Assembly: GCF_041956535.1 (NCBI RefSeq) | Contig: NW_027192191.1 | Span: forward strand, 1,375,443 to 1,439,442 | DNA from: Calcarisporiella thermophila CBS 279.70 | Taxonomy: Eukaryota > Fungi > Calcarisporiellomycota | DNA length: 64,000 bases | Direction: 5' to 3' | Shown: positions 9,668-60,900 of the stretch, piece by piece | Layout of the letters: each line of letters begins with the position of its first letter | Position numbering within the stretch: position 1 is the stretch's first letter | Notes under the pieces: model-generated | What the model saw: the letters and a program-made list of their open reading frames with translations, nothing else | What the model was told of the DNA's origin: nothing | The model's database searches: none | Translations under genes and position numbers: made by a program

Positions 9668-12472
9668 ATGGATGATAATTACTCGCGCCTCAAATTCTTG
9701 GTGAACAAAATCACAACGACGGGTTTATGGTTACTAGACGAGCAAGATTTAAAAGTATTTCCATGACAATATGTAATCATTTCACAGTGATCCTACAACC
9801 TCTGAAAATTTTGAACTCCTCAGGAAATTAAAAGAATCTGTAAGAAAAACGATGAAAATGTCGGATTGTGTTTTGATCTGATCATGACACAGCTTTCCAA
9901 GAAACATTCACAGGTCAAAATGCTTTCCTCCATTATATAACTCCGATGATGATATATTAAATTAGAGCATTTGTACATCCTATTGTAGATCCGCTACTCC
10001 TGTCTACAATTGATCAATGAACTTTTCATTCGTTCCCATATTTTTCGTCAAAAACTCGCCAATGATTTCCCCACTTTTCTGCAGCTCACCGTTGGCATTC
10101 ATCAGAAGGATCTACCTCCGCCAACGAGTGTGGCAGAGAAGCTTAAACAGCTCTCCCTTGCTTTGGTACATCAATGGTGTACAAAATATGGAGATGCATA
10201 CAAACAGGTAAACTGGAAAAGATTCACGTAGGCTGCCACTTTTTCGATGACATTTTTTGCGAAATAGCTGGATCTCGGAAAAGAGTATCTCCAGCAGAAT
10301 CTGAATTTAGATTTGTCTAATAACATTTTGACAGAGCAAGCGGCACGCGCGAAGGAAGAAGAAGCTCGACAAGTAATTAGAAAATTGAATCTCTTTGGAT
10401 TTCGGAATTTATAGCTGGACTCGCAATTGCTATAATAGGCGCGGATTAAGGCAATTAAGGAACGAAAATTCCAACAGTATTGTGACGAAATCGCGGAAGA
10501 GATGCCATCGTTAGAAGAGACTATCAAAGAGATGGTAAGTTATTCGAGTTTTGTTCGTCGGTACGCCCACAATTAACGCAAATTCCGGTTAATTATTTTT
10601 GTGAATAGAGGTCTTGTTTTGAGATTTTGATACCTATTTTCGAGAGAACAAGCTCGCAGCCAACTCCAGGCCTTTCGACATTTAAGGATGTAATGTAGCG
10701 TTGATTCTCAGGGTATTTCGACCTTCTGACCTAACCCATATACCGCTAGATGGCGGCTTCGTATGGCCTTGGCTCCAGTCGCTATACATTAACCATTACG
10801 ATTTCCAGAGATAAACCTCTGGATTTTATCGATGAGAATCCCGAGAACAAGATTGTCTATGATACGATGAGAGAGTTCTATCGAGTCATGGTGAAGAAGC
10901 AAGAGCCACTTGTGAGCCAGTGGATTAACGCGTTAACGAAGCTAGAAATTGAGGTGAGGTGTTTCATCCCGTACAATCCACGTATTCGGCTATTAGATCC
11001 ATACAGCTCTGGGTGATAGGATACGAAGGCGTTGGAGGAGCAACTAAAGCAACTGATCGATATCCGTACCAAATTTACAGAGATTAAAGAGAAAGCTGAA
11101 ATGCTGGGGGCGAATATTGACACTTCACGACCCGGTGCAGAAGAGCAGGAGGAGAATGAAGATGGTCTAGAACAAGAGTTCTTTGGAAGTGATGAGGAGC
11201 AAGCTGAATTCATGCCCCATTCCGATGGAAATGACCCGCAGGAAGGGCCGTCTAATGCTCGCTCCACACACGAAGAAACTTCTACAAATAAAGCGCGGGA
11301 GGAAAACAGCTCTAGCAAGCAACTTCCTAAGACGCAGCGTATTTTTCAGTTAGCGGACGAGCCGGGGCTTGAAGAAGATGTAACCTATCATCGTAATTTA
11401 CCGCAGGTTCTTATGAGCATGCAAAAACTGGACGAGAGAACAAGCGAGGATGTTGGAAAGGGAAAGCAAGCCGTGAGAGATAATGGTGCTATGGTGGAGG
11501 ATGAAGAAGGGAAGCAGCAAAAACCTACCAAAGAAGAATTGCTGAAGATTGCGCCCGTAGTTCCGGTAATGCTCCCACCTCTTTATTTTGCTTAAAATAT
11601 ATCAGCCTAACCTCTTATTTTTTGGTATCAGTGGGCGGATGATCTCTACTATTGGGACAAAGATGATCTTCAGTTCAATACCACCGGTTTAGGTTTGTCC
11701 GAATTTCTTCATTATGGTCAGAGAAGACGGAGACAAGACCTTTACATTTGCTTTTTAATTGCAGAATTTCATCACCGTTTTCTTGGAGACGGCACTGGTG
11801 AAAAGAATCTTTCAAGAAGCACCATGGAACGACTCAAGATGCGCACCGTCTACTATCAAACACAGCGTCCGCAAATGATTAAAGCGTGTCGTGCTCCATT
11901 AAAAACTGGGAAACTCTGCTCTCGCAGAGACCTGAGGGCGTGTCCGTTCCATGGTCCGATAATTCCTCGAGATGAGTGGGGAAGACCTGTGAAGGTAGAG
12001 AAATCGACGGAGAACCGATCTGAGAAGCAGATCGAGAAAGTAGATGAGGAAGATCTGTTAGAAGTGGAACCGAGGGAAGGGGGGGAGGCGGAGGAAGAGG
12101 AAGAGGAAGAGGAAGAGGATCAAATGGGAGCACCCAAAGCATCTACTATTTCAGAAGGTCAACAACTTTCATGGGAGGAGCTTGAAGACGACGTGATGCG
12201 CCAAGTGGGACAGGAGAAAATTTCGACTACTAAAAAGCGGAAGACTACGAAGCCCTCCTCCTACTTAATTGATATTAAGAAGAAGCCGCAAAATTCTATC
12301 ACACGGCTAGAGAGTCGACTTCGGGATCCGAAAATGAAGCGTCGGGTTGAAGAGGTGGGTGGAGATTGCCCTTGGCTATTCTCTGTACTGATAACTTATA
12401 GCTCTCCTCCTACAGGCCGAGAGATACCATGCAGACATCAAGCGAAGAAATAGAAAGGCCAACGTATGGTAA
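9668..12472 (+). CDS. UVSSA: UV-stimulated scaffold protein A (transcription-coupled NER factor)
   Basis: VHS-like N-terminus HSQIRYSCLQLINELFIRSHIFRQ, LPPP..A..L; DLYYW; HRF; C-terminal Zn motif CRAPLKTGKLCSRRDLRACPFHGPIIPRDEWG; multi-exon. Confidence 0.9.
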
Positions 12473-20301: not shown

Positions 20302-22044
20302 TTAAACATCCACTTGTCTCTCCAACTTCTCCAAACGCTCGCGCAAGCTCCCTAGGATCGCTTCGTATTCAACAGGATTGAGGGGATGAGGCTGTTTCAA
20401 GGACATTTGTGAAGCGCTCTCGCCCTCCTTCGTGGCCGGGGGGGATACATTAGAGCTGCCGGCCACTGTTGTGGATTCATTACGGTCAGCATTGCCTGAA
20501 ACACGGTCTCCGGTGCTAGGAGGGTTGGACGGAACTCGGCCATTGGGCTCCCCGCTGGAGTTCAATCCTTCCAAGCGTTCGACTCGGGCAGCCAACTTCA
20601 CAAGCATCTCTCTAATCTCCTCCTGGTCTGCCAGTCTCTCTTGCCAAGCCTCACGGAAGTACCCGTGGACGAGGCCCTCAATCATCCCGGTCGATTGCTG
20701 CAGCGTCTGGAGCAACGCGGTGGATTTTCTCATCTGGTCCTCAAGGGTTGATTTCAATGCTCGAGCGGCGTTGATGTTCTCGTAAAGTTTCTCAAAGGGT
20801 GCCAAGAAACTCTGCCGGTGCAGCTCCTTGGTAGATCCGTCGACCACAGGGATGGGGGGGGAACGGCGGGCAGAGCGGGGGAGCAATATTGGTGCAGTAT
20901 CGGGGGGCGGGGGATAGGCGAGATGTGACGAAGTATGAGGGGGGTGTGGCTGGAGATGGTGGTGCGGATGATGTGGGTGATGGTGGTGATGGTGGAGATG
21001 AGCGAGGGCCGGGTTAAACACCGCGGCTTTTGGTGCGAATTCCGTCGCGCGGGGCGATATGAGGGCACCGATGGTGTGATTGTTCGCGGGCACGACGTTG
21101 GGATAAGCACACGCCCGAGACTCGGTGTTTGGCTTGACGTCCACGTTGCTCCCGGTGGCGCCTCCAGTCGGGGTCGCAAACTGAGCACTCAACATCTGCT
21201 GATGACAACTGTGAGGTGCAGCGGAAATCACTTGCTGCTGCTGCTGTTGCTGGTGATGATAACCCAGGTTCAGGGGTGCTGACCTCAGCGCCAAGTGTGT
21301 ATCTGAATACGAGGGTGCATAAATAGTAAGGTTCCGCATATTCCGCGATCCGGGCCGTCCCTTGGTTCTCCGTGTTTGAGGTATATTGCTTCCAACAATG
21401 GGAGGCTGTGGGAGTGATGGCGAGTGTCGTGACAAGACCTCCCCAATCGAGCTATTTTGGGACGAAGGGTGACGGCCGGTGCTGCCTCCCCGCTGTTGCA
21501 GCGCAAGCTGCCTCGACTCGATGATCGCCTGCTGCTGCTGCTTGAGCTTTTGAGTCGCACGCAGCTGCTCATCTATTAGGGACTCGGAAGGCTTAGGGGC
21601 GACAACGCGAGCGCGCTTAGGTGTCCGCTCACCTTCCGAAGGAGAATGGGAGGTCTCCTCGAGACTCAGGCGCGCCTGAGCCTGCGACTGCTGCGGGGAT
21701 ACTGGTAAGGGGTGAAAGGGCACGTTTTTGGTATCTTTGTTTAATCTAAAGGGAAAATTATATGAGCTTCTGCTCTCCATCCAGGCCATCATCTGATGTT
21801 TTTATGTTTACCTTTTTGCCTCCACAATGGGCCGTGATGGCTGTGGTGTGGGATCAATCATGTGTTCAATGGCCATACTCCGGTTTTTGGAGAGTTTCTC
21901 CGCCGAAGGCTCCCCGTCCATCGAGGCCGAAGAGGGGGGTGTGAGGGAGATGTTCGGGTCCACGATGGTTGTGGAGTGGCCGGGATCATCGGAGAGGATT
22001 TCTCGCGAGGATGTTCGTTTGAGTCGCGAAACTCCTTGTATCAT
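20302..22044 (-). CDS. Largely disordered Q/H/P-rich protein with C-terminal coiled coil, unknown function
   Basis: ORFs 21808-22155 and 20302-21792 joined by an intron (~21746-21811, AKR|LNK); helical block FLAPFEKLYENI..LKSTLEDQMRKS. Confidence 0.7.
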
Positions 22045-22999: not shown

Positions 23000-24700
23000 T
23001 TATTCTTCCTGGGACTTGTCCTCATCCCCCAACGCCCCCTCCTCCCGTTCCCTCTGCTTCTTCCCCTTCTTCCCTTTCGATTTCTGGATCCGCTCACTTC
23101 TCCTCACCTTTTTCCCGGACGTTTCGTTCTCATCCTCCAGCTGCGCCTCCTCTTCCGCATTTATCCCCTCCGCTTCCATCGACTCATCCAAGTCTCTCTC
23201 AGCCTCCAGCCCCCTTTTATCTTCCTCTCCACTGGCAACTTCACCGATCTCTCCACTCTCGTCGTCTGCCATCTCCTCCCCTGTGGAATAGGCCGCTGAG
23301 AAGCGTCGTCGCAAGCTCTGGCTTCCATTCCGGCCCGTCCCTCCATCTCGCATGGCCGGTAAACGTCGGGGAGTTAGGCTTCTTCCGCGTTGTATAGGCT
23401 GTGAAGGAGAGACAAAATTAATGGATGCGTTCGGGTTTCCTAAGGAGGCGGCCATCGACGCAGGCTGTGCACCGCCGATGGGTGAGGTCGATCGCGAACC
23501 AATGGGACTGTGTTCCGACATGGGAGTCACCGGGCGTGATGGCACTGCCAGGTCAGCATGCGGTAAGGGAACCGACGTGGTGCCCATGCGCCGTTTGCGG
23601 CGCGATGGATTAAAATGTTTACAGTTAGGGCAGAAATATTGTATATCATCCACCTCTTGCGGCAAGACGAGTCCATTGTGCGAGAAACAATTCTCACAGA
23701 TGAGTGCGTATTTTGTCTCTGGTCCTTCGTCACCTACAATGACATCCACTAGCCGATCATACCAATTACGCTGGCCTGTGCTCTGGAGAGTATTAGGCCG
23801 CTGGTTCGGATTTTCATTGGTTGGAGAGGGTGCTATTGGTACAAAAAGCAAGTCGTGAGTTGGAAATTCATAACTTCCTTCAAGTGCTGACTGGCCTACC
23901 ACGAACAAGTGGAGTAGCGGGCTGCTGCGTCATCATACTCCCCTTTAGGTTGCCCGGAGTGGCATTACCAGCCAAGGGTGCTGCGTTTGGCGCCGGTGTA
24001 CGTTGCCGCAGCGTAGTAAGATTGGGCTGGATCGGCTGTACTGGCTTACCCGGCGTCTGTGGGTGACCCGCTCCAAGATGATTTGGCTTTTTCCCGCTAG
24101 GGGTCGATATCTGCGGTGGTTGTCCAGTTTTGCGCTGGGAAGAATCGTATCGGTCTAGCAAATTTTTGGTGGCATAATAGGCAGTACGCTTTTTAAGCTC
24201 TTCGACTTTAAGCTTTTGTTTAGCACGAAGATGCCCCAGGCGAGACTCTGAAATGAGCATAAAGAGAATTTAATAAAGCATCATAAGCTGATATGGAGTC
24301 GGACCTTACCTTCACTTGTCTGCTTTCTCCGATACCACATGGAGATGGTTTTTTTCACACCCATCACAATCGCAGGCCCCAGCAAAACAGGTAAAAGTTT
24401 GAGGACCCAAGAGTCCCACGCGTCAGAAGCGCGATTCAGGTACGAGAAGAATCCAATACAATAAAGCGAGTACGCGAGTAAAGAATAAACTAGCCACACT
24501 ATAACAACTCGGCGCTCGCGCACTTTAATCTCGGAGAGACGTAGCTCTGCCTTCTGAATTTTAGAGTCGAGATCGGAGAGGATCTTTTCCCAATCGCTTG
24601 GGTCAGTCTAGAAACAACACATTAATAGGGATCACAGCTGCTGTCATTGAAATGGACCAGTGAAAACTACCTTGTTATAACGTGACAAAAGCGCCCCCAT
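23000..24700 (-). CDS. LNP1: Lunapark, ER three-way junction protein
   Basis: N-myristoylation-type start MGALLSR, two TM segments, coiled coil, WYDRLVDVIVGD, YALICENCFSHNGL...YFCPNCKHFN zinc finger. Confidence 0.93.
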
Positions 24701-40702: not shown

Positions 40703-41317
40703 CTCGCCGTGTTACTTTGTATGCCAAAAGCCGTTTATTGTATAAAATAGCCTGAAGTTACTCCCAAGTATGTAAAAATAGTGACTGCATGTGGCTTGGA
40801 CAACTCCGTAATTAGGGTGGAACTCCTGCGTTAATCGTTTGGGGAAGATAGAGAATTAGGGAGAAATCCTGCGCGTGCCTTATTTTTTATTTTTGTTCAA
40901 TCTTGTATTATCAAGCTATTGTGCAACTATTATACTACCGCCATTATTCTCTAATTCTGGCGTGTTTTACTCAGGCTCCCCTCGTTTCGTCTGCCGTTCC
41001 TTTGTTAAGGATATCAATATCATCTGAAACAGTTTTTCATTTCCTCTAGAGGTACGTAGTTGTCGCCCTTGAATTATTAGGTTGAATGCCTTAGGGATTG
41101 ATTGTTCTCATCCTCTCCATTTCATCTGTCCTATGTTCTTTTGAATTTCACACCCGTAATATGACGGTCGACTGATCCTTCTTCTCAAATTGCTATTAGG
41201 ATCTGATTAGACGAAAGGAGCTACAACGAGGGTTTCCCACTTGGGGAAGCGGTAAAGGGTACTAAAGGCACACACCAACCCCACATTGCCAATCACATAA
41301 TTCATCCCGCATTCTAT

Positions 41318-44300
41318 ATGACATCGCATAATAATTCACAAATAACGTGGTTAAAGCGCAATTCCACGCTCCGTCCTTCCTCAAGGCCTGTAAGCGGTAT
41401 TGGCGGTGGATTGGGTAGTCCCTCTGATCTTTCGTCCCCAAATAAAGACCTAGACTGGCTGCGTGATCTCTCTTCCAGCTATGAAGACATCCAGAAGAAG
41501 ACATATCTGAAATGGATTAATGTCCAACTGAAGCCATTCGGTGATGAAGTCAAATCTATCGAGCACGATCTACGAGATGGCAAACGCCTTCTGAAATTGC
41601 TTGAAGTTGTTTGTCAGGAGCCTGTTCCTCGTCCCGAGCGTGGATCGATGCGTATCCATCAAATGGCTAATGTGTCAAAAGCTCTCAACTTCATCGAGAA
41701 AAAGCTGGGCGAGCCTTTAAGGAATATCGGAAACGAAGATATCGTCGATGGGAACTTGAAGATCACTCTAGGGTTGATTTGGATTTTGATTTTTCGGCTG
41801 CAGATGTCAGGCTTTGCTGATGAAAGAAGTTCGGAAGCTGACAGCTCAGTCCAAGGGGTATAATTTCCTTCTGCTCGGGCTCGCCTTGAGATATTCAATA
41901 GTAGTTATTTACTAATTCTTTGGTTGAGTTTAGGATGATTTTAGCGATATCATGTCTCCTACCACGCCAACAAACTCTAATGGGCACCCTTACGAAGTCA
42001 CCTCTCCAAAGGCCAAGATACAGCGCCCTCCTTCCACCTCCGCACCTACCTCACGCAAGTCTTCCTCTCCCGTCAAGCTTTCATTACCGTCAAAAGACAA
42101 GAAGGATGTGAAATCAAAATTGCTTTCCTGGGCCCAGAGGACGCTAAGATCGTACTCCGAACATTTTCCACAGATCCAGGACTTTCATCGATCATGGAAG
42201 AATGGACTAGCGTTCTCTGCACTTATTCACAGCTATGATGCTAACCTGATGCCTGATTTCTACGAAATGTGCAAAGAAGAGAAGGATGGGGTTGAGAACA
42301 GTGAGGCAGTGGCACGGTGGCGGGAAAGATTGGCGAGGGTTTTTGAAATTGCACAGGAGTCAATGGGAGTACCGCGATTACTAGACCCAGAGGATCTTAC
42401 GGAAGTAGAAACACCTGATGAGCGTTCAGTGATGACATACGTGTCAGAATTTTATCGTGTTCTCCCAAAGAAGGAGGAGGGGTCGTCTCAGAAAACCACC
42501 ACTGCAAAGAAATCTTTACGAGCGAAAAACCGGAGAGGTGAAGAAGAGAGATCCAATAGTCAGACACCCTTTCAGATTGTGGAGGAGCTCTCTTCCAACG
42601 CACCCAAGGTCTTGGCGGAGATATTGCTGGATGATGAAGAAAGAGAGTTTCCGAAATCTCCGAAATCGCCGCTGGAAAATCTACAAATACAGGCACAGGC
42701 AGCCATGAAGCCTCCATCTGGAAAACGGGAAGTGGGCAAGTTACGTCGTGAGACCATGGATATGTTTCAGCGAAAGCCGACAACTGCCACTCGCCCTACA
42801 GAGCAGAAACGTATCTCGAGTTTGGATGATACTACTAAGGCACGCTTAAAGGCTGAATTGGAAGGAACTCTGCAGCGTCAGCTAGAGGGCTATCATCCTC
42901 TCCTGGGTAAACTATTCCGTAGCGTAGAAGCTTTGTGCAAATGGATCGACCAGCAGTACGAGGCACTTCCCTCCACTCCTTCCATTCTCACGGTGTCTAC
43001 GCTATCAGATGAAGCAGTCCAAGATCTACAAGAGGCACTTGTACGCATTGAGGAAAACTTACGCCGCCACCAGAGTGTATTCGGAGACTTGCAACAGCTA
43101 TATGAGGAGCAGATTGTTCCTCTTTTTTTCGGTGATCCCGACAGTGATGACGCTGCCACTACGGCGACCGTTCGTCTATCAGAAGTTCAACGAAAGCATA
43201 TCGAGGAATCTTACGAATTGGCTTCTACAAAGTGGAACGAACTGGGAAACATAATAGTGCAGTATGATGACAATTTGTCTGCCTTTGAGGTGTTGTTGCC
43301 TTTTGTCACGAAGGCAAACTATCTGTCAGAGGAGTGCCGGCAGGTTGCAAAGGCAGTTCGAGATACAATGCGAGTGAATCGTTTATCTCACGAAACCCCT
43401 GAGTTGTTTTTTGGCGCTAGTAAGATATCTGAGAGGAGGAACGGCCTTGATCAGATGCGTAGTCAGGCAAATTCGGTGGAAGATGAATTGGTCAAGCTAG
43501 AAAAGAATTTGGAAGAAGCCGCTACAACTTTAGCTCATGAGGGTCAAACCCCTGTGGTTCGGCAGCGCTGCCAGGAGGTACGTGAGCTAGGGTTTCCAGA
43601 GATGCACGGGGCTTTAGAATGGGCTGAAAAGGTGGTCTCTCTCGATGAGCAAATTGCCGACTATTTACAGCGTGCTGCTCGGATTTGTGACCATATCGCC
43701 GGATATAAAGAGAGGGCACAAGATATCGACAAAATCATCTCTGTATATGCTAAAGCCGATAACAAGCTACCCCTCCCTTCTGGAACGAGGCTGGAGCAAG
43801 AGGAAAAGGAGATAGAGCGTAGGCTCATTCTTCTCGAGGAGCTCAAGAGGCAAACTACAAATTTTTCAAGGGAGTCTGTTCAAGAATTATCCCAAACCGG
43901 CCAAGGGATAGTCGAGATGGTGAAGCGATTATTTATGGCTGAAGACAGTGAATGGACGAAGGAGACTCTTGAAAAAGATGTGGGCGTAGCTTGCGTGCAC
44001 TTCCAAAATGCAACCATAGATAATGCTATTACTGACCTAAGGCAGCTGATGGAGAAGGTGCAAGAATGGACTACCACCCAGCGGAGTGTTCTTCGATACT
44101 TGAAAAATGCTGCTAGCATACGGTCGCAAGTCGACGCAGCGGTTAGCAGTGCTCACGCTATAGAAACCGATGGAGAACGTTTGAGCCAAATTGAGTCGCA
44201 AGTACGTCAAGCATTCGCCGATTTGGATGCACTTTGGCGCGCTTCCGATCCTGTTGTGCAACCCTTAGTGCAGCAGAGACATCGAGCTATGGAGATGATA

Positions 44301-47300
44301 TTAGGCAATTCTCTTTCGGAAGTTCTCACAAAGCGTTCTGAGCTCATTATGCGAGACAAGGATAATGTCAGCTCTTCGCTGGCTGAGTTTGACGCCAGTG
44401 CAAACTCAATGCTCGACAAGATGAATGCGTTGATGCAAGAATTCCAATTCACAGTTGTAGGTCAATCGTCATCTCTATTTGTGCAAGGCGCAGTTACACC
44501 GCCGACCTCTCCAGGATACATGGAGCGCCGGGGAAGCACCGAGAGTACCGAAGAGGACCGAGACCAGAGTACACAACAACGAACCCTGGATGGGTTGACA
44601 TGCTCGGCTGAAGATGTGGAGCTGTTTCGAGAGAAACTTCGAAACTGTGTTGCTCGGTTGGATCAGTTCATTATTTCAGAGTGGAAGCCATTCCTCGAGC
44701 TTTATGCAAAAGCCTTTTCTGGCGCCAAAGAAAACGTCGTTGTTGATGCTCGTCTATCCGTTTTACAAAGGACTTTCGATGAGCTCGAGTCTCTGCGCCA
44801 AGCTCGATGCGATGAGCTTGCTTCTCTTGATCATGTGTTTCAGTTTGTGCAGGAGGCGCAGGCCATACAACGAGAGCTTGAGGCAATTCAGGGCAAATTA
44901 CAGAAGACAGGGGCAACCACCGATGAGAGCTTGCACTCATTAGAGGCTCGTGTGAGTGATACACAAAATCGCATCCGGCTTTTCCACACGAATTTCCCAG
45001 ATTTACTGGCGACTCTGGCGCCAGATTTAAATGATGAAGGGCAGTCGAAAGCCAGATATGCAAAGGTATAACTGAATATAAGAATGAGGATAAATTGAAT
45101 ACCACTGACACTCCCCATTTTGGATATATATAGCTTTATGAGGCTCTACTACAAAAACAGGAGGCGGTGCAAGCTTGGGTTGAAGAAGTTCGAGTTTGGT
45201 TTGTTGAAGCTGAGCGGATTCGTGTATGGCTCGAGGAACGCTCCAAAATTGTGGAATCTCGCCCAAGCATTGATCCACTTGCTCCAGATCTTAATGTTAC
45301 ATATTCCGAGGCAGAGCGGCTCAACTCAGAACATGAGGCTATTGTCCAGGAAGTGGAATCCTTTAATCAGGAAGATATGGCTCGACTTCGAGCGCATGTT
45401 AAGGCACTAACTGTCGCCCAAGCCAGAAAGGATTTGAGCCCAGCAGATACCACTACTATCTCGATTACGCTTAGCACCCTTACGATCCTCGACCACCTGA
45501 CTTACCTATTGCGAAGGCGCACATATGAGCTCACGCTTTTATCTCTGCGTACCCAGTGGGAGGAACAATATGGAAAGGCGGTTAAAACGGTGGAAGTTAT
45601 CAATAGGAAAATCAAGAGTTTTCTTACTGATAACGGGAGGTGGAGCGCAGGAGATTGTCCCGCTATACCATCACATAATGACTTTGCTTCCGCTCCACAG
45701 TTGGATTACAATGAACTAAAGCGTGGCCTCAAAGCACATCAAGAAGCGGCTGTCAAAACCCTATTGGAGATTGAGCGGAGTGTCTCCGAATTTAATCAAA
45801 ATCTCTTCTCGTCTACCCAGGACGTTTTCCAAGAGTTCGACGAAATGTGTGCAAAAGGTGCGCCTGAGCACCTTGAGTCGCGTCAGACTGCACTAGAAAA
45901 TCGCTTCGAAATTGCCACGAAACGTGCTGGTTTTGTACGTCAGGCTGTAGAGCAAAAGTTGGCTGTGGCCGACTACACATTCCAAGTGGATGTGCTTGTA
46001 TGGGACGCAGAGGGATTGCGGGACGATCTTATCGCAGCCGAAAGAAACACTCGCCCTGACGATCTCATTGACTTTTACCAATTGCAGGTAGATCAATATG
46101 CGGACAGGGCTAATGAAATAATCTCCATCTTGGGACCAAAGATCCAATATCCGAGCGCTCCCGTTGCTGAGGATGAGGCAGAGAACAAGGTGGTCAATGA
46201 AATGATTCGTGAGACGATCGAGGCAAGAAAGCAGAAGTTGCTAGATTTGGGTGAAGAGTTGGAGACAGCATTGAACGCATTAAAGAGGACGCTTTCATTA
46301 CATAAGCGATTAAAGCAGGTCGTAGAAGAGGTGACAAGGCTCCAGACTTGGCTTGAAAAGAAAGCCACCGAGATCAAAGCTGCTCTAGATCCCAGGATGA
46401 ACAATTCATCTAATATAGCCGACTCGGAGGTAGATCAGCTAAGAGTTCAACATCAGGACTTTGTGACCGAGTTAAAGGTGTTTGAAGAGAATGAGCTTGC
46501 TAATTTTCGGTCCGAAATTGAGTCTCTCTTGGGAGAAATCAGTGCTACTGCGGATTCAACTATAGATGTTTCTCAAATCAAGCCGGCATATGACCGTGTT
46601 GGGCAAGACTTCCAGCGCCTTCAAGAAATTCTCCACTCCTATTCACAGGACATCGTATTGCTCCAGCGGCGCCATCAGATTGAATTTGCTTCTCGTTCGG
46701 AAGAACTCCTGAGTCGACTTGGTTTGGTACGTAGGGAGGTCGAGGGACTGCAACCCGACTCTGTCGAAGAGGAACACATCGAGCGACTTGAGGTGGAATT
46801 TGATCAGTTAGAAAGTGTGGATCTCCGTACGCTACAGGATCTTGTGCGGGGTGATGGGCAAACCACGATGGATGGAAAACCGCGCCCCCGCCTCTCGGAA
46901 GAAGATCTTGATGTTATGGAAGAGAAGCTGATTGAAGTCGAGGGAGAATTTGTCGAGCTGCGCCACTTGTTCACCCGGCTAGTACGGGAAGCGAAAAACC
47001 ACCGTATGAACGTCGCATTCTTCAATAGTGCGGATCGCCTCCGCACTTCGCTTGATGGTGCAATTGAGCGATGGCGGTTAGCTGAATCATCACACGGTTT
47101 AATTGTTGGCGATGCATCGGATCGTGAGCATCTTCGTATTATTACTAAAGCTTTGCAGAAGTTGCGCCTCGACTATGCAGAGATCACGGAGGAGCATGAT
47201 GAGCTATACTCGTACTATGAACTACTCTGTGCACAAGACGAGCTCGACACACTAAATCAAGTACAAAGCCGGCAGGCCGAGCTCGAAGAAAAATGGGAGG

Positions 47301-49906
47301 AACTGACTTATAAGGCAGATACTGCAGACACTATAGTGTCTAGGGTTGGCCATTGGGTCGAGTATCATACCGCTGTAAGCCGTGTGGAAAATGAAATGTT
47401 CAGTGGTTTAACCGAGCGAGTGGAGCGGTTGGCGGCATTGGGATGGGATGCAATCGAGTCAGAGGTGAGAGAACTAAACGAGCGCATCGAAGCAGGAGAA
47501 AACATGTTAGCGTCCATCAAACAGGCTGCAGAATCACTTGACGTGGTTGAGGTTGCAATTGATTTGGACGATAAAAATCGTCGTGCATTTTTGCAGCACT
47601 ATGACCGTGCAATAGCATATGCAAGTGATCTTAGAGAAGCATTCCAGGCGTCGGCTGATTCGGTGTGTAAAGCGTCCCGCATTGCAGCGTTCCGAGCTCA
47701 AGCAAACAACATTCGATCTTTGTGTGGACATCAAACTGAGGTGCTGCGTTCACGATGTGAGGAAATAGAACGTTCTCGCTTTTATGCTCTTGATGTCGAG
47801 GCCCTAGAGAAAATACTTCGAAATACACAACAAGGCCATGATATGAGTCTCCAAGAATATTCGCGCTGTAAAGACCAAGCAGAGACCCATCTTCGCCCTG
47901 CTGTGCAAAATATGGAGGAGAGCTTCACCGGGTCACAGCGGGTTCGTGAAATTTTCGGCCAAGTGCAAACAGCCCTAGCAGATTTCTCTACCGCGCTGGA
48001 TGCCGAATCGCATCAATTAGAACTCGTGCGTCTCGTACTGGAGCAATGTCGGGAAGCACGTAAGATCCGCAACTGGATGGCCTCGTTCAAGGTGGTAATG
48101 CTGGGCATTCAGGTGAGCGCTGCAGATACCAGCGAGAAGGAAATCGATGAGTTGGAGGTGAAGAAAAACGAGTTTGCCCCGCAAATTGAATCCTTTATTG
48201 CGCGAAATAATGAAGCACTTCCTTTGCAAGAGGGATCCATTCTTCTGCGCTGTGAAGAGGCTGCGCAGGCAAGAGCAAATCGTGTGCTCGATGAATGGAA
48301 CGCTCTGCAAGAGCTCCTAGCAGCAATTAGAATTAGTCATGAAAAGTCACGAATGTCGATGGACATATCGCAGCGAGTGAAGGAGCTTCTTGAATGTATT
48401 TCCGAATTGAAAGGTCGAGTGCTTGCAGTCCAAATTCAGGGGAACCTCTCGGATGCTACATCGGATGCTGTTAACCGCCTCCCACGTGAAAAGGATGCAA
48501 TTAAATCGGACAACGAGTTAACGCAGATTGAGACAGAGGTGCGCGAACAATTGCTTCCTAAAGTGGAGTCTTTCGACGCTGTCCTGGTAGAGGCGGTGGA
48601 GAAAGACAGCTGCCTTGTACGACAGCGTGCCGAGATTGCCGAAGCTGTTGCTGGTCTTAATGGACTACTTGAGTCTAAGCGGCAGCAGGTTGGAGACGCG
48701 CTTAAAATCGGAAAAGCAATGTCGCTTTCAGATGAAGTTGAAAAGCTGCTCTCCAAGCTGTTTGAATTGATCGAAGCCTTTAAACCAAAACTTCGCAACC
48801 CTGACTTAATTTTAGTTCAACAGCAGTTGGAGCGCATGGACGGAGAGGCAAGGTTGATAAATTCCTCGATTGAGGAGAAAATGGGAGCCACACGAGAAGC
48901 CGCTACTCTCGTTGTGGATGACTGGCGGGTATCGGAGCGGATAGACGAGTTGGATGAGAGATGGGCGGAGGCGCGGCTGATGATACAGGAGTATAGAGAT
49001 TGGATTCGCAAGGCACGTGGTTCACAGACTCCACCGCGAAGCCCCATCGGGAGATCAAGAAAGACCTCAAGTAATATGTCAACCTCTCCGAGGTCATTGT
49101 CCCGCACCCGGCCCACCCGCCCCGCGTCCATTGCAACCGAGGCTGAGCTAGCATTCCGACACACTGGACGTCCCACGAGTTCGGCCTCGCGTCTCTCTAC
49201 ACGACATTCTATGTCGGGACGTGGTAGTCCTTCTCCACCCCCTCCGGCTTCGCGTCGCACCTCCATGAATGTTCGTCGATCTCGTATATTCTTCAAGACC
49301 ACGCCCAACAAATATGTTGCTGATCCAACCAATGAGCTTGACGTGGAGATCGGAAAGATTGTGAATGAGTGTCCGATTAAGATACATGTAGCAAAGGTGA
49401 ACGGAGAAGTTGGGAAGTATTGGTTTGGTGAAAAAGATCCCAAGTTGTGCTATTGTCGAATTTTGAGAAGCAAAATGATCATGGTCAGAGTGGGAGGAGG
49501 ATGGGTAGAATTATCGAAGTGAGTATATAGTACTTTTGCACTTGTTTTGGGATTGGACAATAGCTCAATATGCAATGTTTACCACACTAGGTTCCTTAAA
49601 GATCACGGATCAAGGGAAGATCGCCAAGCGCGTGCGTGCACTCTAGTTGATATTAATACCTCATCTACTGTCTCTCCATCATCTTTACTCACGCCAAACT
49701 CATCCCAAGCCTCCTCTTCTAGTCAAAATACCGCTGCTCGTTCATTAACGTCTCCACGCATGGCTAGGGCTGTCTCGCCTGGTAGAGTTGAAGGAGATAT
49801 GTTCTTACATACAGATGAGAATGGTGTGCAGCGAGCAGTTGCGATGAGGAAGGCAGGAGATAGAGAATATACACCAATCGTGAAGCGAAAGCCATTTATG
49901 ACATAA
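41318..49906 (+). CDS. ~2,790-aa tandem calponin-homology + spectrin-like helical rod + GAS2 (GAR) domain protein
   Basis: CH1 IQKKTYLKWIN...EDIVDGNLKITLGLIWILI; CH2 LLSWAQ...SWKNGLAFSALIH...LLDPED...PDERSVMTYVSEFY; GAS2 GKYWFG...CRILRSKMIMVRVGGGWVELSKFL; introns 41858-41933, 45066-45133, 49519-49590 all restore frame. Confidence 0.88.
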
Positions 49907-57940: not shown

Positions 57941-60900
57941 ATGGTGAAGAAGGTCATCGATCCTAGGATACACACACTTATCAAGAATGGTGTTCAAAAT
58001 AAACACCGTACATTCTTTGTTGTTGTGGGTGATAAGGGCAGAGACCAAGTGGTAAACTTGCACTGGTTGCTCTCTCAAGCGCAAGTGAGTTCGCGGCCGT
58101 CAGTTTTGTGGTGCTATAAAAAGGAACTTGGGTTCACAAGGTTAGTAGCAATGCTGTTTTTGATGTCTTGATTGATTTTCTCTTACATCATATAAAAATA
58201 TAGTCACCGTAAAAAGCGTGAAGCAAAGATAAAAAAGGAAATCAAGCGTGGTATTCGAGAAGCTAATACGGAAGATCCATTTGAACTCTTTGTTGCCGTG
58301 ACAAATATTCGGTACTGTTACTATAAGGAAACTCAGAAGATCCTAGGTAATACCTATGGCATGTGTATTTTACAGGTATGCTTTTTTAGAGCAATGGGTC
58401 TACCTCAATTATTAAATGCCAATTACTCTCCTGGATTAGGATTTTGAGGCTTTGACCCCAAACTTGCTGGCGAGAACTATTGAGACGGTAGAGGGAGGAG
58501 GAATTGTTGTGCTTTTACTTAAAACAATGAATTCTCTCAAGCAGCTCTACACGATGACTATGGTACCCTGCTCGCTTTTTTAAGTTGTTTGGAAATAGCC
58601 ATATTAATCGATTTTGTAGGATGTGCACTCACGCTATCGCACTGAGTCCCACCACGATGTCGTAGCTCGATTTAATGAACGATTTATACTCTCCCTCGGC
58701 TCATGCGAGAACTGCTTGGTTGTTGACGACGAATTGAATGTTTTACCCATTTCTGCTGGTAAAAACGTGAAGCCGTTGCCTCTCAAGACTCCAGTATGCA
58801 CTCTCTTAGCTCCTTTCTTTTATTCAGTTAACTCCAACTTTCTACATTTAGGATGAGCAATTAACTGAATCTCAGCGAGAACTCAAAGAGCTTAAGGATT
58901 CTCTTGCCGAAACGCAGCCTGCTGGTTCACTTGTTGCTACAGCACGAACTCTCGACCAAGCTAAGGCTATTCTAACGTTTATTGAGGCCATATCCGAGAA
59001 AACTCTCCGTAGCACCGTTACATTAACTGCCTCTCGTGGTCGTGGTAAATCTGCTGCACTGGGGATTGCAATTGCGTCAGCCGTTGCGTTCGGCTATTCG
59101 AACATTTTTGTAACTTCTCCCAGCCCTGAGAACTTGAAGACATTATTTGAATTTATCTTCAAAGGCTTCGATGCCCTCAAATACGAAGAGCATTTGGACT
59201 ACGATATTGTGCAGAGTACAAACCCGGCATTTAATAAGGCAATTGTACGAGTGAATATTTTCAGGCAACACCGACAAACTATTCAGGTATGATAATGTTT
59301 TGGAGACACCAGGAATTGTGTACTGACTGTCTTTGTCTGTCCTTTTTTATTATTTCAACAAAATATCATAGTATATCCAACCTCAAGATGCTCATACTCT
59401 TGGTCAAGCTGAGCTCGTCGTTATCGACGAGGCTGCTGCCATTCCGCTTCCCTACGTTAAGAAGCTTCTTGGTCCTTACCTGGTGTTTATGGCTTCAACC
59501 ATCAATGGCTACGAAGGTACTGGCCGCTCTCTTTCTTTGAAGCTCATCCAACAATTGCGCGAGCAATCTCGCGGGTTTGTTGGGAAGGTGAATGGGACTT
59601 CTAACGAGCACGGCACGGTCGTGAGCCGAGAGGGTAAAGAAGTCAAGCAGTCCGCGGAGGGAGTTACCGGCGGAGTAGCCGGAGGGCGTACCCTTCGAGA
59701 GATCAAGCTCGACGAGCCGATCAGATATAATCCCGGAGATCACGTAGAGAAGTGGCTCAACAAGCTGCTGTGTCTAGATGCCACTGCTGTTTCCAAAAAC
59801 ATCCAAGGCTGCCCACATCCTTCAGAGTGCGAGCTCTTCTACGTGAATCGCGATACTTTGTTCAGCTTCCATCCCGTGAGCGAAGTTTTTCTACAGCGAA
59901 TGATGGCTCTCTATGTCGCAAGCCACTATAAGAATACCCCCGATGATCTACAGCTTATGAGCGATGCACCCGCCCACCACCTCTTTGTGCTGCTCCCACC
60001 CATTCCAGAGGGAAGCCAAACTCTACCTGATCCATTGTGTGTGATTCAAGTGTGTTTGGAAGGTGAGATCTCGAAACAGACTGTACTGAACAGTCTGGCG
60101 AAAGGTGTGCGGGCAGGAGGAGATTTGATTCCATGGCTAATTGCACAACAGGTTTTGTATTCTCTAAAACATTCATTTCAACCCAACCACATCCTCTAAT
60201 ACCAGGTATAATTCTTCTTGCAGTTCCAAGATGATGATTTTGCTTCGCTCTCTGGCGCTCGTGTTATCCGCATTGCCACCCACCCCGACTATAGTAGCAT
60301 GGGCTACGGGTCACGCGCTCTTGAACTCTTGACTAAATTTTACCAAGGCGACTTTACTAACCTGAGGGAGAGTGACGAGTTAATGGGTGACGATGAGATT
60401 GTACGGGTAACTGATAAGGAGCTAGAGGTAAGAACTAGACTTATTTATTGCTTATTATTGTTTTGTATCGGAATATATATTTATACTTGTATTATGTAGA
60501 ATGTTACTCTGCAATCAGATGATATCCGCGTACGTGATCCTCGAAAGATGCCTCCTCTTCTGCTGAAGCTTTCGGAAAAGCGACCGGATCTTCTACACTA
60601 TATTGGCGTTTCTTACGGACTTACACAACAACTTCACAAGTAAATTGGATATTGTTTTCATCATCTTTGAATATGTATTGAGTTTATTTATTTTGCATTA
60701 TTTTTAGGTTTTGGAAAAAAGCTGGTTTCATCCCTCTCTATTTGCGACAAACTACTGTAAGTTGACGTGAGGGTTATGTTGTAGGGCTTTCCTTTTGCTA
60801 ATACCATCACCATTTCTTTAGAATGCTTTGACAGGAGAACACACCTGCGTGATGCTAAAGGTGCTCAAGAATGAAATTCTAGAAACCCAAACATCAAATG

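What the first reader, a model, noticed from the sequence alone, without database searches (positions are those of the whole stretch)
41318..49906. Fungal spectraplakin-like giant cytolinker (CH1-CH2, ~2,100-aa helical rod, GAS2)
Seen: four exons splice into one ~2,790-aa frame that the ORF track shows as separate proteins. It has an alpha-actinin/spectrin-type tandem CH actin-binding domain, a long Trp-punctuated helical rod resembling spectrin repeats, a basic S/R/P-rich linker, and a C-terminal GAS2 domain. Known: actin-binding domain + spectrin rod + GAS2 is the architecture of animal spectraplakins (MACF1, dystonin, Shot), which crosslink actin and microtubules and are usually treated as animal-specific. 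I see no clear plakin/SH3 region, EF-hand or canonical SxIP motif. Inference: an uncharacterised actin-microtubule crosslinking system in early-diverging fungal hyphae, either a pre-metazoan ancestor of spectraplakins or a convergent fusion. This is the strongest candidate for novel biology in the window.
Basis: partly seen in the sequence, partly recalled or inferred. Interest (0 to 1): 0.82.

Follow-up and report, generated by a model that had tools for sequence, protein, structure and literature searches.

The report
Ancient fungal spectraplakin-like cytoskeletal linker
This is a real 2,790-residue gene whose product has an actin-binding head, a spectrin-repeat rod and a microtubule-binding tail like animal spectraplakins; it belongs to an old fungal family for which I found no experimental study, and its tail end looks like the source of the yeast spindle-positioning protein Kar9.

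Summary
Observation confirmed. Four exons give one 2,790-aa frame, and a public database protein (P0161) contains the four exon translations exactly, in order. CH1, CH2 and GAS2 pass Pfam cut-offs. The rod is made of spectrin repeats: AlphaFold models match alpha/beta-spectrin (Z 19.5), and a fungal-only rod profile hits beta-spectrin (E 1.5e-10). The same CH1-CH2 + long rod + GAS2 layout occurs in Chytridiomycota, Blastocladiomycota, Zoopagomycota and Mucoromycota; Glomeromycotan and basidiomycete orthologues lack CH. It is not a spectraplakin by membership: no plakin SH3, EF-hand, SxIP motif or GAR zinc site. Its CH pair groups with alpha-actinins, and an AU test rejects grouping with spectraplakins (p=0.035), which favours separate assembly over direct ancestry. 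A 2022 paper (PMC9145010) already mentions fungal CH/SR/GAS2 proteins in passing; I found no functional study. New here: the last three repeats align end to end with Kar9-GAS2 paralogues in this genome (HHalign 97%, E 3e-11), suggesting Kar9 is a truncated paralogue. Earlier scan notes had flagged those Kar9-GAS2 genes on other contigs. Crosslinking is inferred, not shown. No RNA reads could be obtained.

The parts
41318..41857 (+). Exon 1 (aa 1-180): low-complexity leader and CH1
41489..41791 (+). CH1 domain, alpha-actinin/spectrin type
   Evidence: Pfam CH E 4.5e-18; best PDB sequence matches are alpha-actinins, 112 bits against 87 for MACF1
41858..41933 (+). Intron 1, 76 nt, phase 0
   Evidence: matches P0161
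41934..45065 (+). Exon 2 (aa 181-1224): CH2, charged linker, first part of the rod
42108..42467 (+). CH2 domain
   Evidence: Pfam CH E 1e-17; best PDB match S. pombe Ain1 (5bvr) 82 bits, MACF1 59 bits
42801..45065 (+). N-terminal rod: all-alpha and spectrin-like, with no beta strand (no SH3) where a plakin domain would sit
   Evidence: AF2 mean pLDDT 82, no strands; Foldseek best rows are spectrin and actinin rods, E about 7e-3; HHalign to Glomeromycotan orthologue N-termini 97%, E 1.5e-11
45066..45133 (+). Intron 2, 68 nt, phase 0; joins the CH-bearing exon to the GAS2-bearing exon
   Evidence: collinear orthologues
45134..49518 (+). Exon 3 (aa 1225-2686): rest of the rod, basic linker, most of GAS2
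45191..46363 (+). Most conserved rod block: three spectrin repeats forming a unit of about 360-380 aa that is repeated 3-5 times in longer orthologues
   Evidence: AF2 pLDDT 94; VIA-align Z 19.5 to alpha-spectrin R15-17; Foldseek E 7e-5 to beta2-spectrin; repeat units in P0009, P0136, P0147
47891..49003 (+). Last three spectrin repeats; align with the folded domain of Kar9-like paralogues
   Evidence: Profile A4 hits beta-spectrin E 1.5e-10; HHalign to Kar9-GAS2 paralogues 97%, E 3e-11
48998..49288 (+). Basic S/R/P-rich disordered linker, where spectraplakins have EF-hands
   Evidence: net +18 in 97 aa
49340..49518 (+). GAS2/GAR domain, completed by the first codons of exon 4; microtubule-contact residues kept, zinc ligands absent
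   Evidence: Pfam GAS2 E 1.9e-12
49519..49590 (+). Intron 3, 72 nt, phase 2, inside GAS2
49591..49906 (+). Exon 4: end of GAS2, S/R/T-rich tail and a short conserved C-terminal motif; stop at 49904-49906
   Evidence: tail matches in Mucorales orthologues

Best explanation
A vertically inherited fungal cytolinker that works like a stripped-down spectraplakin. Shown: domain content, spectrin-repeat fold of the tested rod segments, distribution across fungi. Inferred: the CH1-CH2 pair binds F-actin (cortex, cables or patches). About 16-17 spectrin repeats (estimated from rod length at about 124 aa per repeat) act as a spacer of very roughly 80-90 nm and as a scaffold. The GAR domain, helped by the basic linker and tail, binds and stabilises the microtubule lattice. 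The protein would tie microtubules to actin for nuclear or spindle positioning or for polarity. It would do so without EF-hand calcium control and, in this copy, without a canonical EB1-binding motif. The family predates the split of chytrids from other fungi. It was most likely assembled separately from animal spectraplakins, from an alpha-actinin-related head and rod plus a GAS2 tail. The CH head was later lost in Glomeromycota and Basidiomycota. Kar9(-GAS2) probably corresponds to its C-terminal third.
For: Domains. Rod fold. Rod sequence homology to spectrin: with reversed-sequence controls. GAR residues needed for microtubule binding in GAS2 (R242, R252, G255, W257; PMC12084551) are kept in this protein and nearly invariant in 146 fungal members. 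Cooperation of GAR and a basic tail is described for Shot (bioRxiv 10.1101/122010). Distribution. CH tree: the fungal giants form one clade (100/98) on the same side as alpha-actinins (100/95) in two LG+C20 trees; the AU test against a giant+spectraplakin clade gives p=0.035. The last repeats show no match to MACF1/dystonin last repeats (0.4%) but match beta-spectrin repeats (95%) and Kar9 (97%). The genome keeps a separate conventional alpha-actinin.
Against: There are no binding, localisation or transcript data. The GAR zinc site, which is structurally important in animals, is absent family-wide, and the K266 position is acidic. CH has been lost or has decayed in many orthologues and GAS2 is undetectable in the Neocallimastix one, so crosslinking is not the only role under selection. 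A quick LG+G4 tree put the giants weakly (89) on the spectraplakin/dystrophin/nesprin side. The trees are unrooted and use about 210 columns.
Confidence: 0.62

Rival explanations
1. Shared ancestry: one opisthokont CH1-CH2 + long spectrin rod + GAS2 giant gave the fungal family and, after duplications, the animal spectraplakins. Beta-spectrin, dystrophin and nesprin lost GAS2, and plakin SH3 and EF-hands were gained in animals or lost in fungi. The function would be the same as in the best explanation.
For: Identical domain order; presence in the earliest fungal branches; proposed in PMC9145010. If the CH tree is rooted on alpha-actinins, the fungal clade becomes sister to all long-rod animal families together. 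One GAS2 gain with two losses is only one step longer than two gains. The quick tree leans this way.
Against: AU p=0.035 against direct sisterhood with spectraplakins; no rod similarity to MACF1/dystonin last repeats; no EF-hand, SH3 or zinc site. Among the 150 listed CH-pair hits, those with GAS2 that I could name were fungal or animal; none was a unicellular holozoan. That list is only the top of 5,120 hits, so it does not show absence.
Confidence: 0.25
2. Not a direct actin-microtubule crosslinker: mainly a microtubule-bound spectrin-repeat scaffold (for example at the spindle pole body, nuclear envelope or septum) or a Kar9-like adaptor that reaches actin through a myosin, with the CH head dispensable.
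For: Glomeromycotan and basidiomycete orthologues keep rod and GAS2 but no CH. One Mucorales paralogue has a decayed CH1. The most conserved part outside CH and GAR is a rod block. Kar9 reaches actin through Myo2 (own knowledge).
Against: CH1 and CH2 are intact and 45-58% identical to orthologues across four fungal phyla, which implies selection on actin binding in those lineages.
Confidence: 0.11
3. Annotation artefact: separate neighbouring genes joined by false introns.
For: No RNA reads were obtained; P0161 is probably also a prediction.
Against: Canonical short low-GC introns; the GAS2 domain itself spans intron 3; collinear single-chain orthologues in many genomes.
Confidence: 0.02

Closest known systems
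Animal spectraplakins (MACF1/ACF7, dystonin/BPAG1, Drosophila Shot, VAB-10)
   Same: CH1-CH2 head, long spectrin-repeat rod, C-terminal GAR with conserved microtubule-contact residues, basic S/R-rich tail.
   Different: No plakin domain with SH3, no EF-hand pair, no SxIP in this copy, no GAR zinc ligands; half the size or less; the CH pair and last repeats are not closest to spectraplakins.
Fungal 'CH/SR/GAS2' and 'SR-GAS2' proteins of Paradzik et al. 2022 (PMC9145010)
   Same: Very probably the same family, noted there as intermediate forms in fungi.
   Different: The paper gives one sentence and a figure I could not see; no accession could be matched in the supplements held. The passages read give no fold test, no survey across fungal phyla, no Kar9 link and no experiment.
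Alpha-actinin (including S. pombe Ain1)
   Same: Closest CH1-CH2 by score and by tree; spectrin-repeat rod.
   Different: Alpha-actinins have 2-4 repeats and EF-hands and no GAS2; this genome has its own alpha-actinin gene on another contig.
Kar9 (PF08580; structure 7ag9)
   Same: Three spectrin repeats followed by a basic S/R/P-rich region. This genome's three Kar9-like genes also end in a GAS2 or GAS2-like domain, and their folded domain aligns with the giant's last three repeats. The giant's first rod block matches 7ag9 at Z 15.5.
   Different: Kar9 is 650-1000 aa and has no CH. The giant itself does not hit the KAR9 Pfam model.
GAS2 / GAS2-like proteins
   Same: CH plus GAR actin-microtubule crosslinkers.
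   Different: They have a single type-3 CH and no spectrin rod.

Membership tests
Spectraplakin | Tandem CH1-CH2 actin-binding domain | tested here: met
Spectraplakin | Plakin domain: spectrin repeats with an inserted SH3 after the ABD | tested here: not met
   No SH3 or plakin Pfam hit at E up to 1; AF2 model of the exon-2 rod has no beta strand; definition
Spectraplakin | Spectrin-repeat rod | tested here: met
   below the Pfam Spectrin cut-off, but clear by fold and by profile
Spectraplakin | EF-hand pair before GAR | tested here: not met
   No EF hit in this protein or in chytrid, Allomyces and basidiomycete orthologues, while the animal controls hit; the position holds a basic low-complexity linker
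Spectraplakin | GAR/GAS2 domain | tested here: met
   R242, R252, G255 and W257 equivalents kept
Spectraplakin | Zinc-binding motif of GAR (CxC ... DxC) | tested here: not met
   0 of the fungal members have CxC before GAR and the DxC positions are not kept; present in the animal controls
Spectraplakin | C-tail with SxIP EB1-binding motifs | tested here: not met
   None in any exon; a loose SxIP-like pattern occurs in 60 of 132 homologues, significance untested
Spectraplakin | Monophyly with animal spectraplakins (CH pair) | tested here: not met
   AU p=0.035; a quick tree disagreed weakly
Spectraplakin | Binds and crosslinks F-actin and microtubules | not testable with these tools
   needs biochemistry
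Alpha-actinin | CH1-CH2, 2-4 spectrin repeats, EF-hands | tested here: not met
   Rod of about 2,045 aa, no EF-hand, GAS2 tail; the clade is separate from actinins; a true actinin lies elsewhere in the genome
Spectrin superfamily (broad) | CH1-CH2 ABD followed by tandem three-helix spectrin repeats | tested here: met
Kar9 | KAR9 Pfam domain | tested here: not met
   No hit for the giant; two of the three paralogues hit
Kar9 | Folded domain of three spectrin repeats homologous to Kar9's | tested here: inconclusive
   HHalign 97%, E 3e-11, 306 columns; control block 0.6%; but beta-spectrin triplets also reach 95%, E 2.5e-8
GAS2-like proteins | Single type-3 CH directly linked to GAR | tested here: not met
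   Tandem CH1-CH2 and a long rod

The most novel reading that the evidence does not exclude
The last common ancestor of fungi had a spectraplakin-grade actin-microtubule cytolinker that comes from the same long-rod opisthokont ancestor as animal spectraplakins, and yeast Kar9 is a truncated duplicate of its C-terminal third (three spectrin repeats, basic linker, GAR lost later in ascomycetes). Kar9 and MACF1/Shot would then be true distant homologues rather than functional analogues. The Kar9 half alone I put at about 0.6, the shared-ancestor half at about 0.3.
Probability: 0.2. Interest if true: 0.85.

Novelty: new variant of a known kind. Interest (0 to 1): 0.62.

Why it matters
Direct actin-microtubule crosslinking by one giant protein is usually taught as an animal feature, and fungal cell biology rests on yeasts and moulds in which I saw no such giant among the hits. 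This family shows that zoosporic and early hyphal fungi keep a CH-spectrin-GAR protein. It can be tested in tractable species that carry it (Spizellomyces punctatus SPPG_08355, Allomyces macrogynus AMAG_01583, Mucor lusitanicus). It also offers a concrete origin for Kar9 and a natural zinc-free GAR domain with which to ask what the zinc site does.

Tried and rejected
Pfam Spectrin does not reach its cut-off in the rod, and the first rod block's profile finds nothing in PDB by sequence; only the fold shows it. Hits to phage phi29 scaffolding protein are coiled-coil noise. I first read the genome as lacking a separate alpha-actinin; this was wrong, since an intron-rich actinin is on contig C4. 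P0139 had no contig on record. A local sliding-window HHalign control timed out and was replaced by targeted comparisons. A GAS2-domain tree was not built because no GAS2-like or protist GAS2 sequences were available, and PDB scores for GAS2 and MACF1 tie at about 27 bits. Paper searches for Kar9+GAS2+fungi found nothing, and searches for fungal GAS2 studies found nothing relevant; the library lacks most subscription papers. The Atlas feature hits to KAR9 clusters are weak leads only.
Full report
Observation. The ORF list shows four separate frames on the + strand between 41318 and 49906. Frame-preserving GT..AG introns at 41858-41933 (phase 0), 45066-45133 (phase 0) and 49519-49590 (phase 2) join them into 8,373 nt, or 2,790 aa plus stop. 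The introns are short and GC-poor (0.31-0.36 against 0.46-0.49), and two have branch-point-like motifs. A database protein of 2,790 aa, P0161, came back from a search with another species' CH pair. The four exon translations are exact substrings of it at residues 1, 181, 1225 and 2687. Orthologues run collinearly across the exon 2/exon 3 junction. All searches were made exon by exon and the joined step was left out.

Domains. Pfam gives CH in exon 1, CH in exon 2 and GAS2 at the end of exon 3, all above cut-off, with no SH3, plakin or EF-hand hit. Against PDB sequences both CH domains score best with alpha-actinins: CH1 112 bits against 87 for MACF1, and CH2 82 bits with S. pombe Ain1 against 59 for MACF1. 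The GAR domain keeps the equivalents of GAS2 R242, R252, G255 and W257, whose mutation weakens microtubule binding (PMC12084551; alignment). These positions are almost invariant in 146 fungal members. The K266 position is D or E, and the zinc ligands seen in the animal controls are missing throughout the fungal family. A 97-aa linker with net charge +18 sits where spectraplakins have EF-hands. No SxIP, LxxPTPh or EF-loop pattern occurs in any exon.

The rod is made of spectrin repeats. An AlphaFold model of window 45191-46363 (66-row alignment, pLDDT 94) matches three tandem repeats: alpha-spectrin R15-17 at Z 19.5, beta2-spectrin at 18.8, plectin SR7-9 at 17.6 and Kar9 at 15.5, with unrelated helical bundles below 11. 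Foldseek agrees (E 7e-5). The exon-2 rod model (pLDDT 82) is all-helical with no strand, so it has no SH3 insert; its best matches are again spectrin rods, though weaker. A profile of the last three repeats, built from fungal sequences only, hits beta-spectrin at E 1.5e-10 and alpha-spectrin at 1.3e-7; reversed-sequence controls score far lower. The middle of exon 3 was not modelled. About 16-17 repeats is an estimate from rod length. Longer orthologues grew by repeating a unit of about 360-380 aa.

Distribution. CH1-CH2 + long rod + GAS2 in one chain is found in Mortierella, Actinomortierella, Jimgerdemannia and many Mucorales. It is also found in Basidiobolus and Entomophthora, in Allomyces, Blastocladiella and Sorochytrium, and in Spizellomyces, Geranomyces and Thoreauomyces. 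Mucorales have a second, shorter paralogue with a decayed CH1. Glomeromycotan orthologues of about 3,200 aa have rod and GAS2 but no CH, and no CH gene is called within 10 kb upstream in Glomus cerebriforme. Basidiomycete orthologues of 1,100-2,000 aa also lack CH. The Neocallimastix orthologue has the CH pair and rod but no detectable GAS2. This genome has one copy and a separate intron-rich alpha-actinin. The family is therefore at least as old as the chytrid-Dikarya split and is not tied to hyphae.

Origin. In CH1+CH2 trees under LG+C20+F+G4, the fungal giants form one clade (100/98) on the same side of a 100/95 branch as alpha-actinins, apart from beta-spectrins, dystrophins, nesprins and spectraplakins. 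The result holds without three chytrid rows whose CH2 was only half aligned. Forcing giants and spectraplakins together is rejected at p=0.035. A quick LG+G4 tree leaned weakly the other way (89). Many reference rows were labelled by similarity to named members. The trees are unrooted: if rooted on alpha-actinin, the fungal clade is sister to all long-rod animal families together, so a shared long-rod ancestor that already carried GAS2 remains possible. The last repeats of the fungal rod do not match those of MACF1/dystonin (0.4%). I therefore favour separate assembly over direct ancestry, at roughly two or three to one.

The Kar9 link. The genome has three Kar9-like genes ending in a GAS2 or GAS2-like domain, on contigs C5, C13 and C18. 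They are paralogues of each other. One passes both the KAR9 and GAS2 cut-offs, one passes KAR9 only and one passes GAS2 only. The Atlas lists a 112-member, mostly basidiomycete cluster with KAR9 in 88% and GAS2 in 62% of members, so this fusion is widespread in databases. The folded domain of the three paralogues aligns over 306 columns with the giant family's last three repeats (HHalign 97%, E 3e-11). It does not align with the first rod block (0.6%), beta-spectrin (0.85%) or MACF1 (0.2%). The order three repeats - basic linker - GAR is the same in both. The caveat is that chosen beta-spectrin triplets also align with the giant's last repeats (95%, E 2.5e-8) and the Kar9 profile has only three rows, so the margin is modest. 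I read Kar9 as probably a truncated paralogue of the giant (about 0.6). Two earlier scan notes had flagged the Kar9-GAS2 genes; I saw them after finding the genes myself.

Mechanism. Shown: the anatomy and its conservation. Inferred from the known behaviour of CH1-CH2 pairs and of GAR plus basic tail: the head binds F-actin, the tail binds and stabilises the microtubule lattice, and the rod spaces the two and scaffolds partners. The likely role is to couple microtubules to cortical or cable actin for nuclear, spindle or polarity control. Loss of CH in several lineages suggests that the microtubule-bound scaffold role can persist alone.

What is known. PMC9145010 states that intermediate CH/SR/GAS2 proteins exist in fungi and uses them to place the spectraplakin ancestor at the base of Opisthokonta. 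The existence of the family is therefore not new, though I could not match accessions. Public annotations call members hypothetical, 'actinin alpha 2' or 'spectrin beta chain'. I found no functional study and no paper linking Kar9 to fungal GAS2 proteins, within a library that lacks most subscription journals.

Verdict. This is a real gene of the spectrin superfamily that works like a spectraplakin by inference but fails membership on plakin SH3, EF-hand, SxIP, zinc site and CH monophyly. New variant of a known kind; interest 0.62.

Noticed in passing
L015:7033-9279 (G000:C5), L013:6842-9409 (G000:C13), L022:3635-6151 minus (G000:C18): Three Kar9-like paralogues, each ending in a GAS2 or GAS2-like domain; the C13 and C5 copies carry SxIP-like motifs. 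In the C5 and C18 copies the GGGW hairpin has diverged.
   Followed up: yes
G000:C4:1198878-1201229 (-): Conventional intron-rich alpha-actinin gene (CH pair, rod, C-terminal EF region), separate from the giant.
   Followed up: partly
P0009, P0136-P0148 (Glomeromycota): Orthologues of about 3,200 aa lack CH and contain 3-5 copies of a three-repeat unit of about 360 aa, which shows rod growth by block duplication.
   Followed up: partly
P0200 / P0315 (Neocallimastix): Orthologue with CH pair and rod but no detectable GAS2 domain.
   Followed up: partly
P0261, P0246, P0268 (Spizellomycetales): CH2 is split by an insertion of about 65-75 aa.
   Followed up: no
P0188 (C. elegans M116.5): A 1,020-aa protein with three CH matches and GAS2, whose CH pair falls inside the spectraplakin clade.
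   Followed up: no
window 41052-41198 (approximate): A GT..AG, pyrimidine-rich stretch upstream of the ATG looks like a 5' UTR intron.
   Followed up: no
window 23003-23908 (-), 11695-12450 (+), 59483-60196 (+), 20305-21792 (-): Neighbouring exons match Lunapark zinc ribbon, DUF2043, NAT10/TcmA and, weakly, Mis12: ordinary eukaryotic genes with no evident link to the giant.
   Followed up: partly
L023:1959-6503 (G000:C3): Single 1,514-aa ORF with a long coiled coil (weak Filament and crescentin hits, below cut-off).
   Followed up: no
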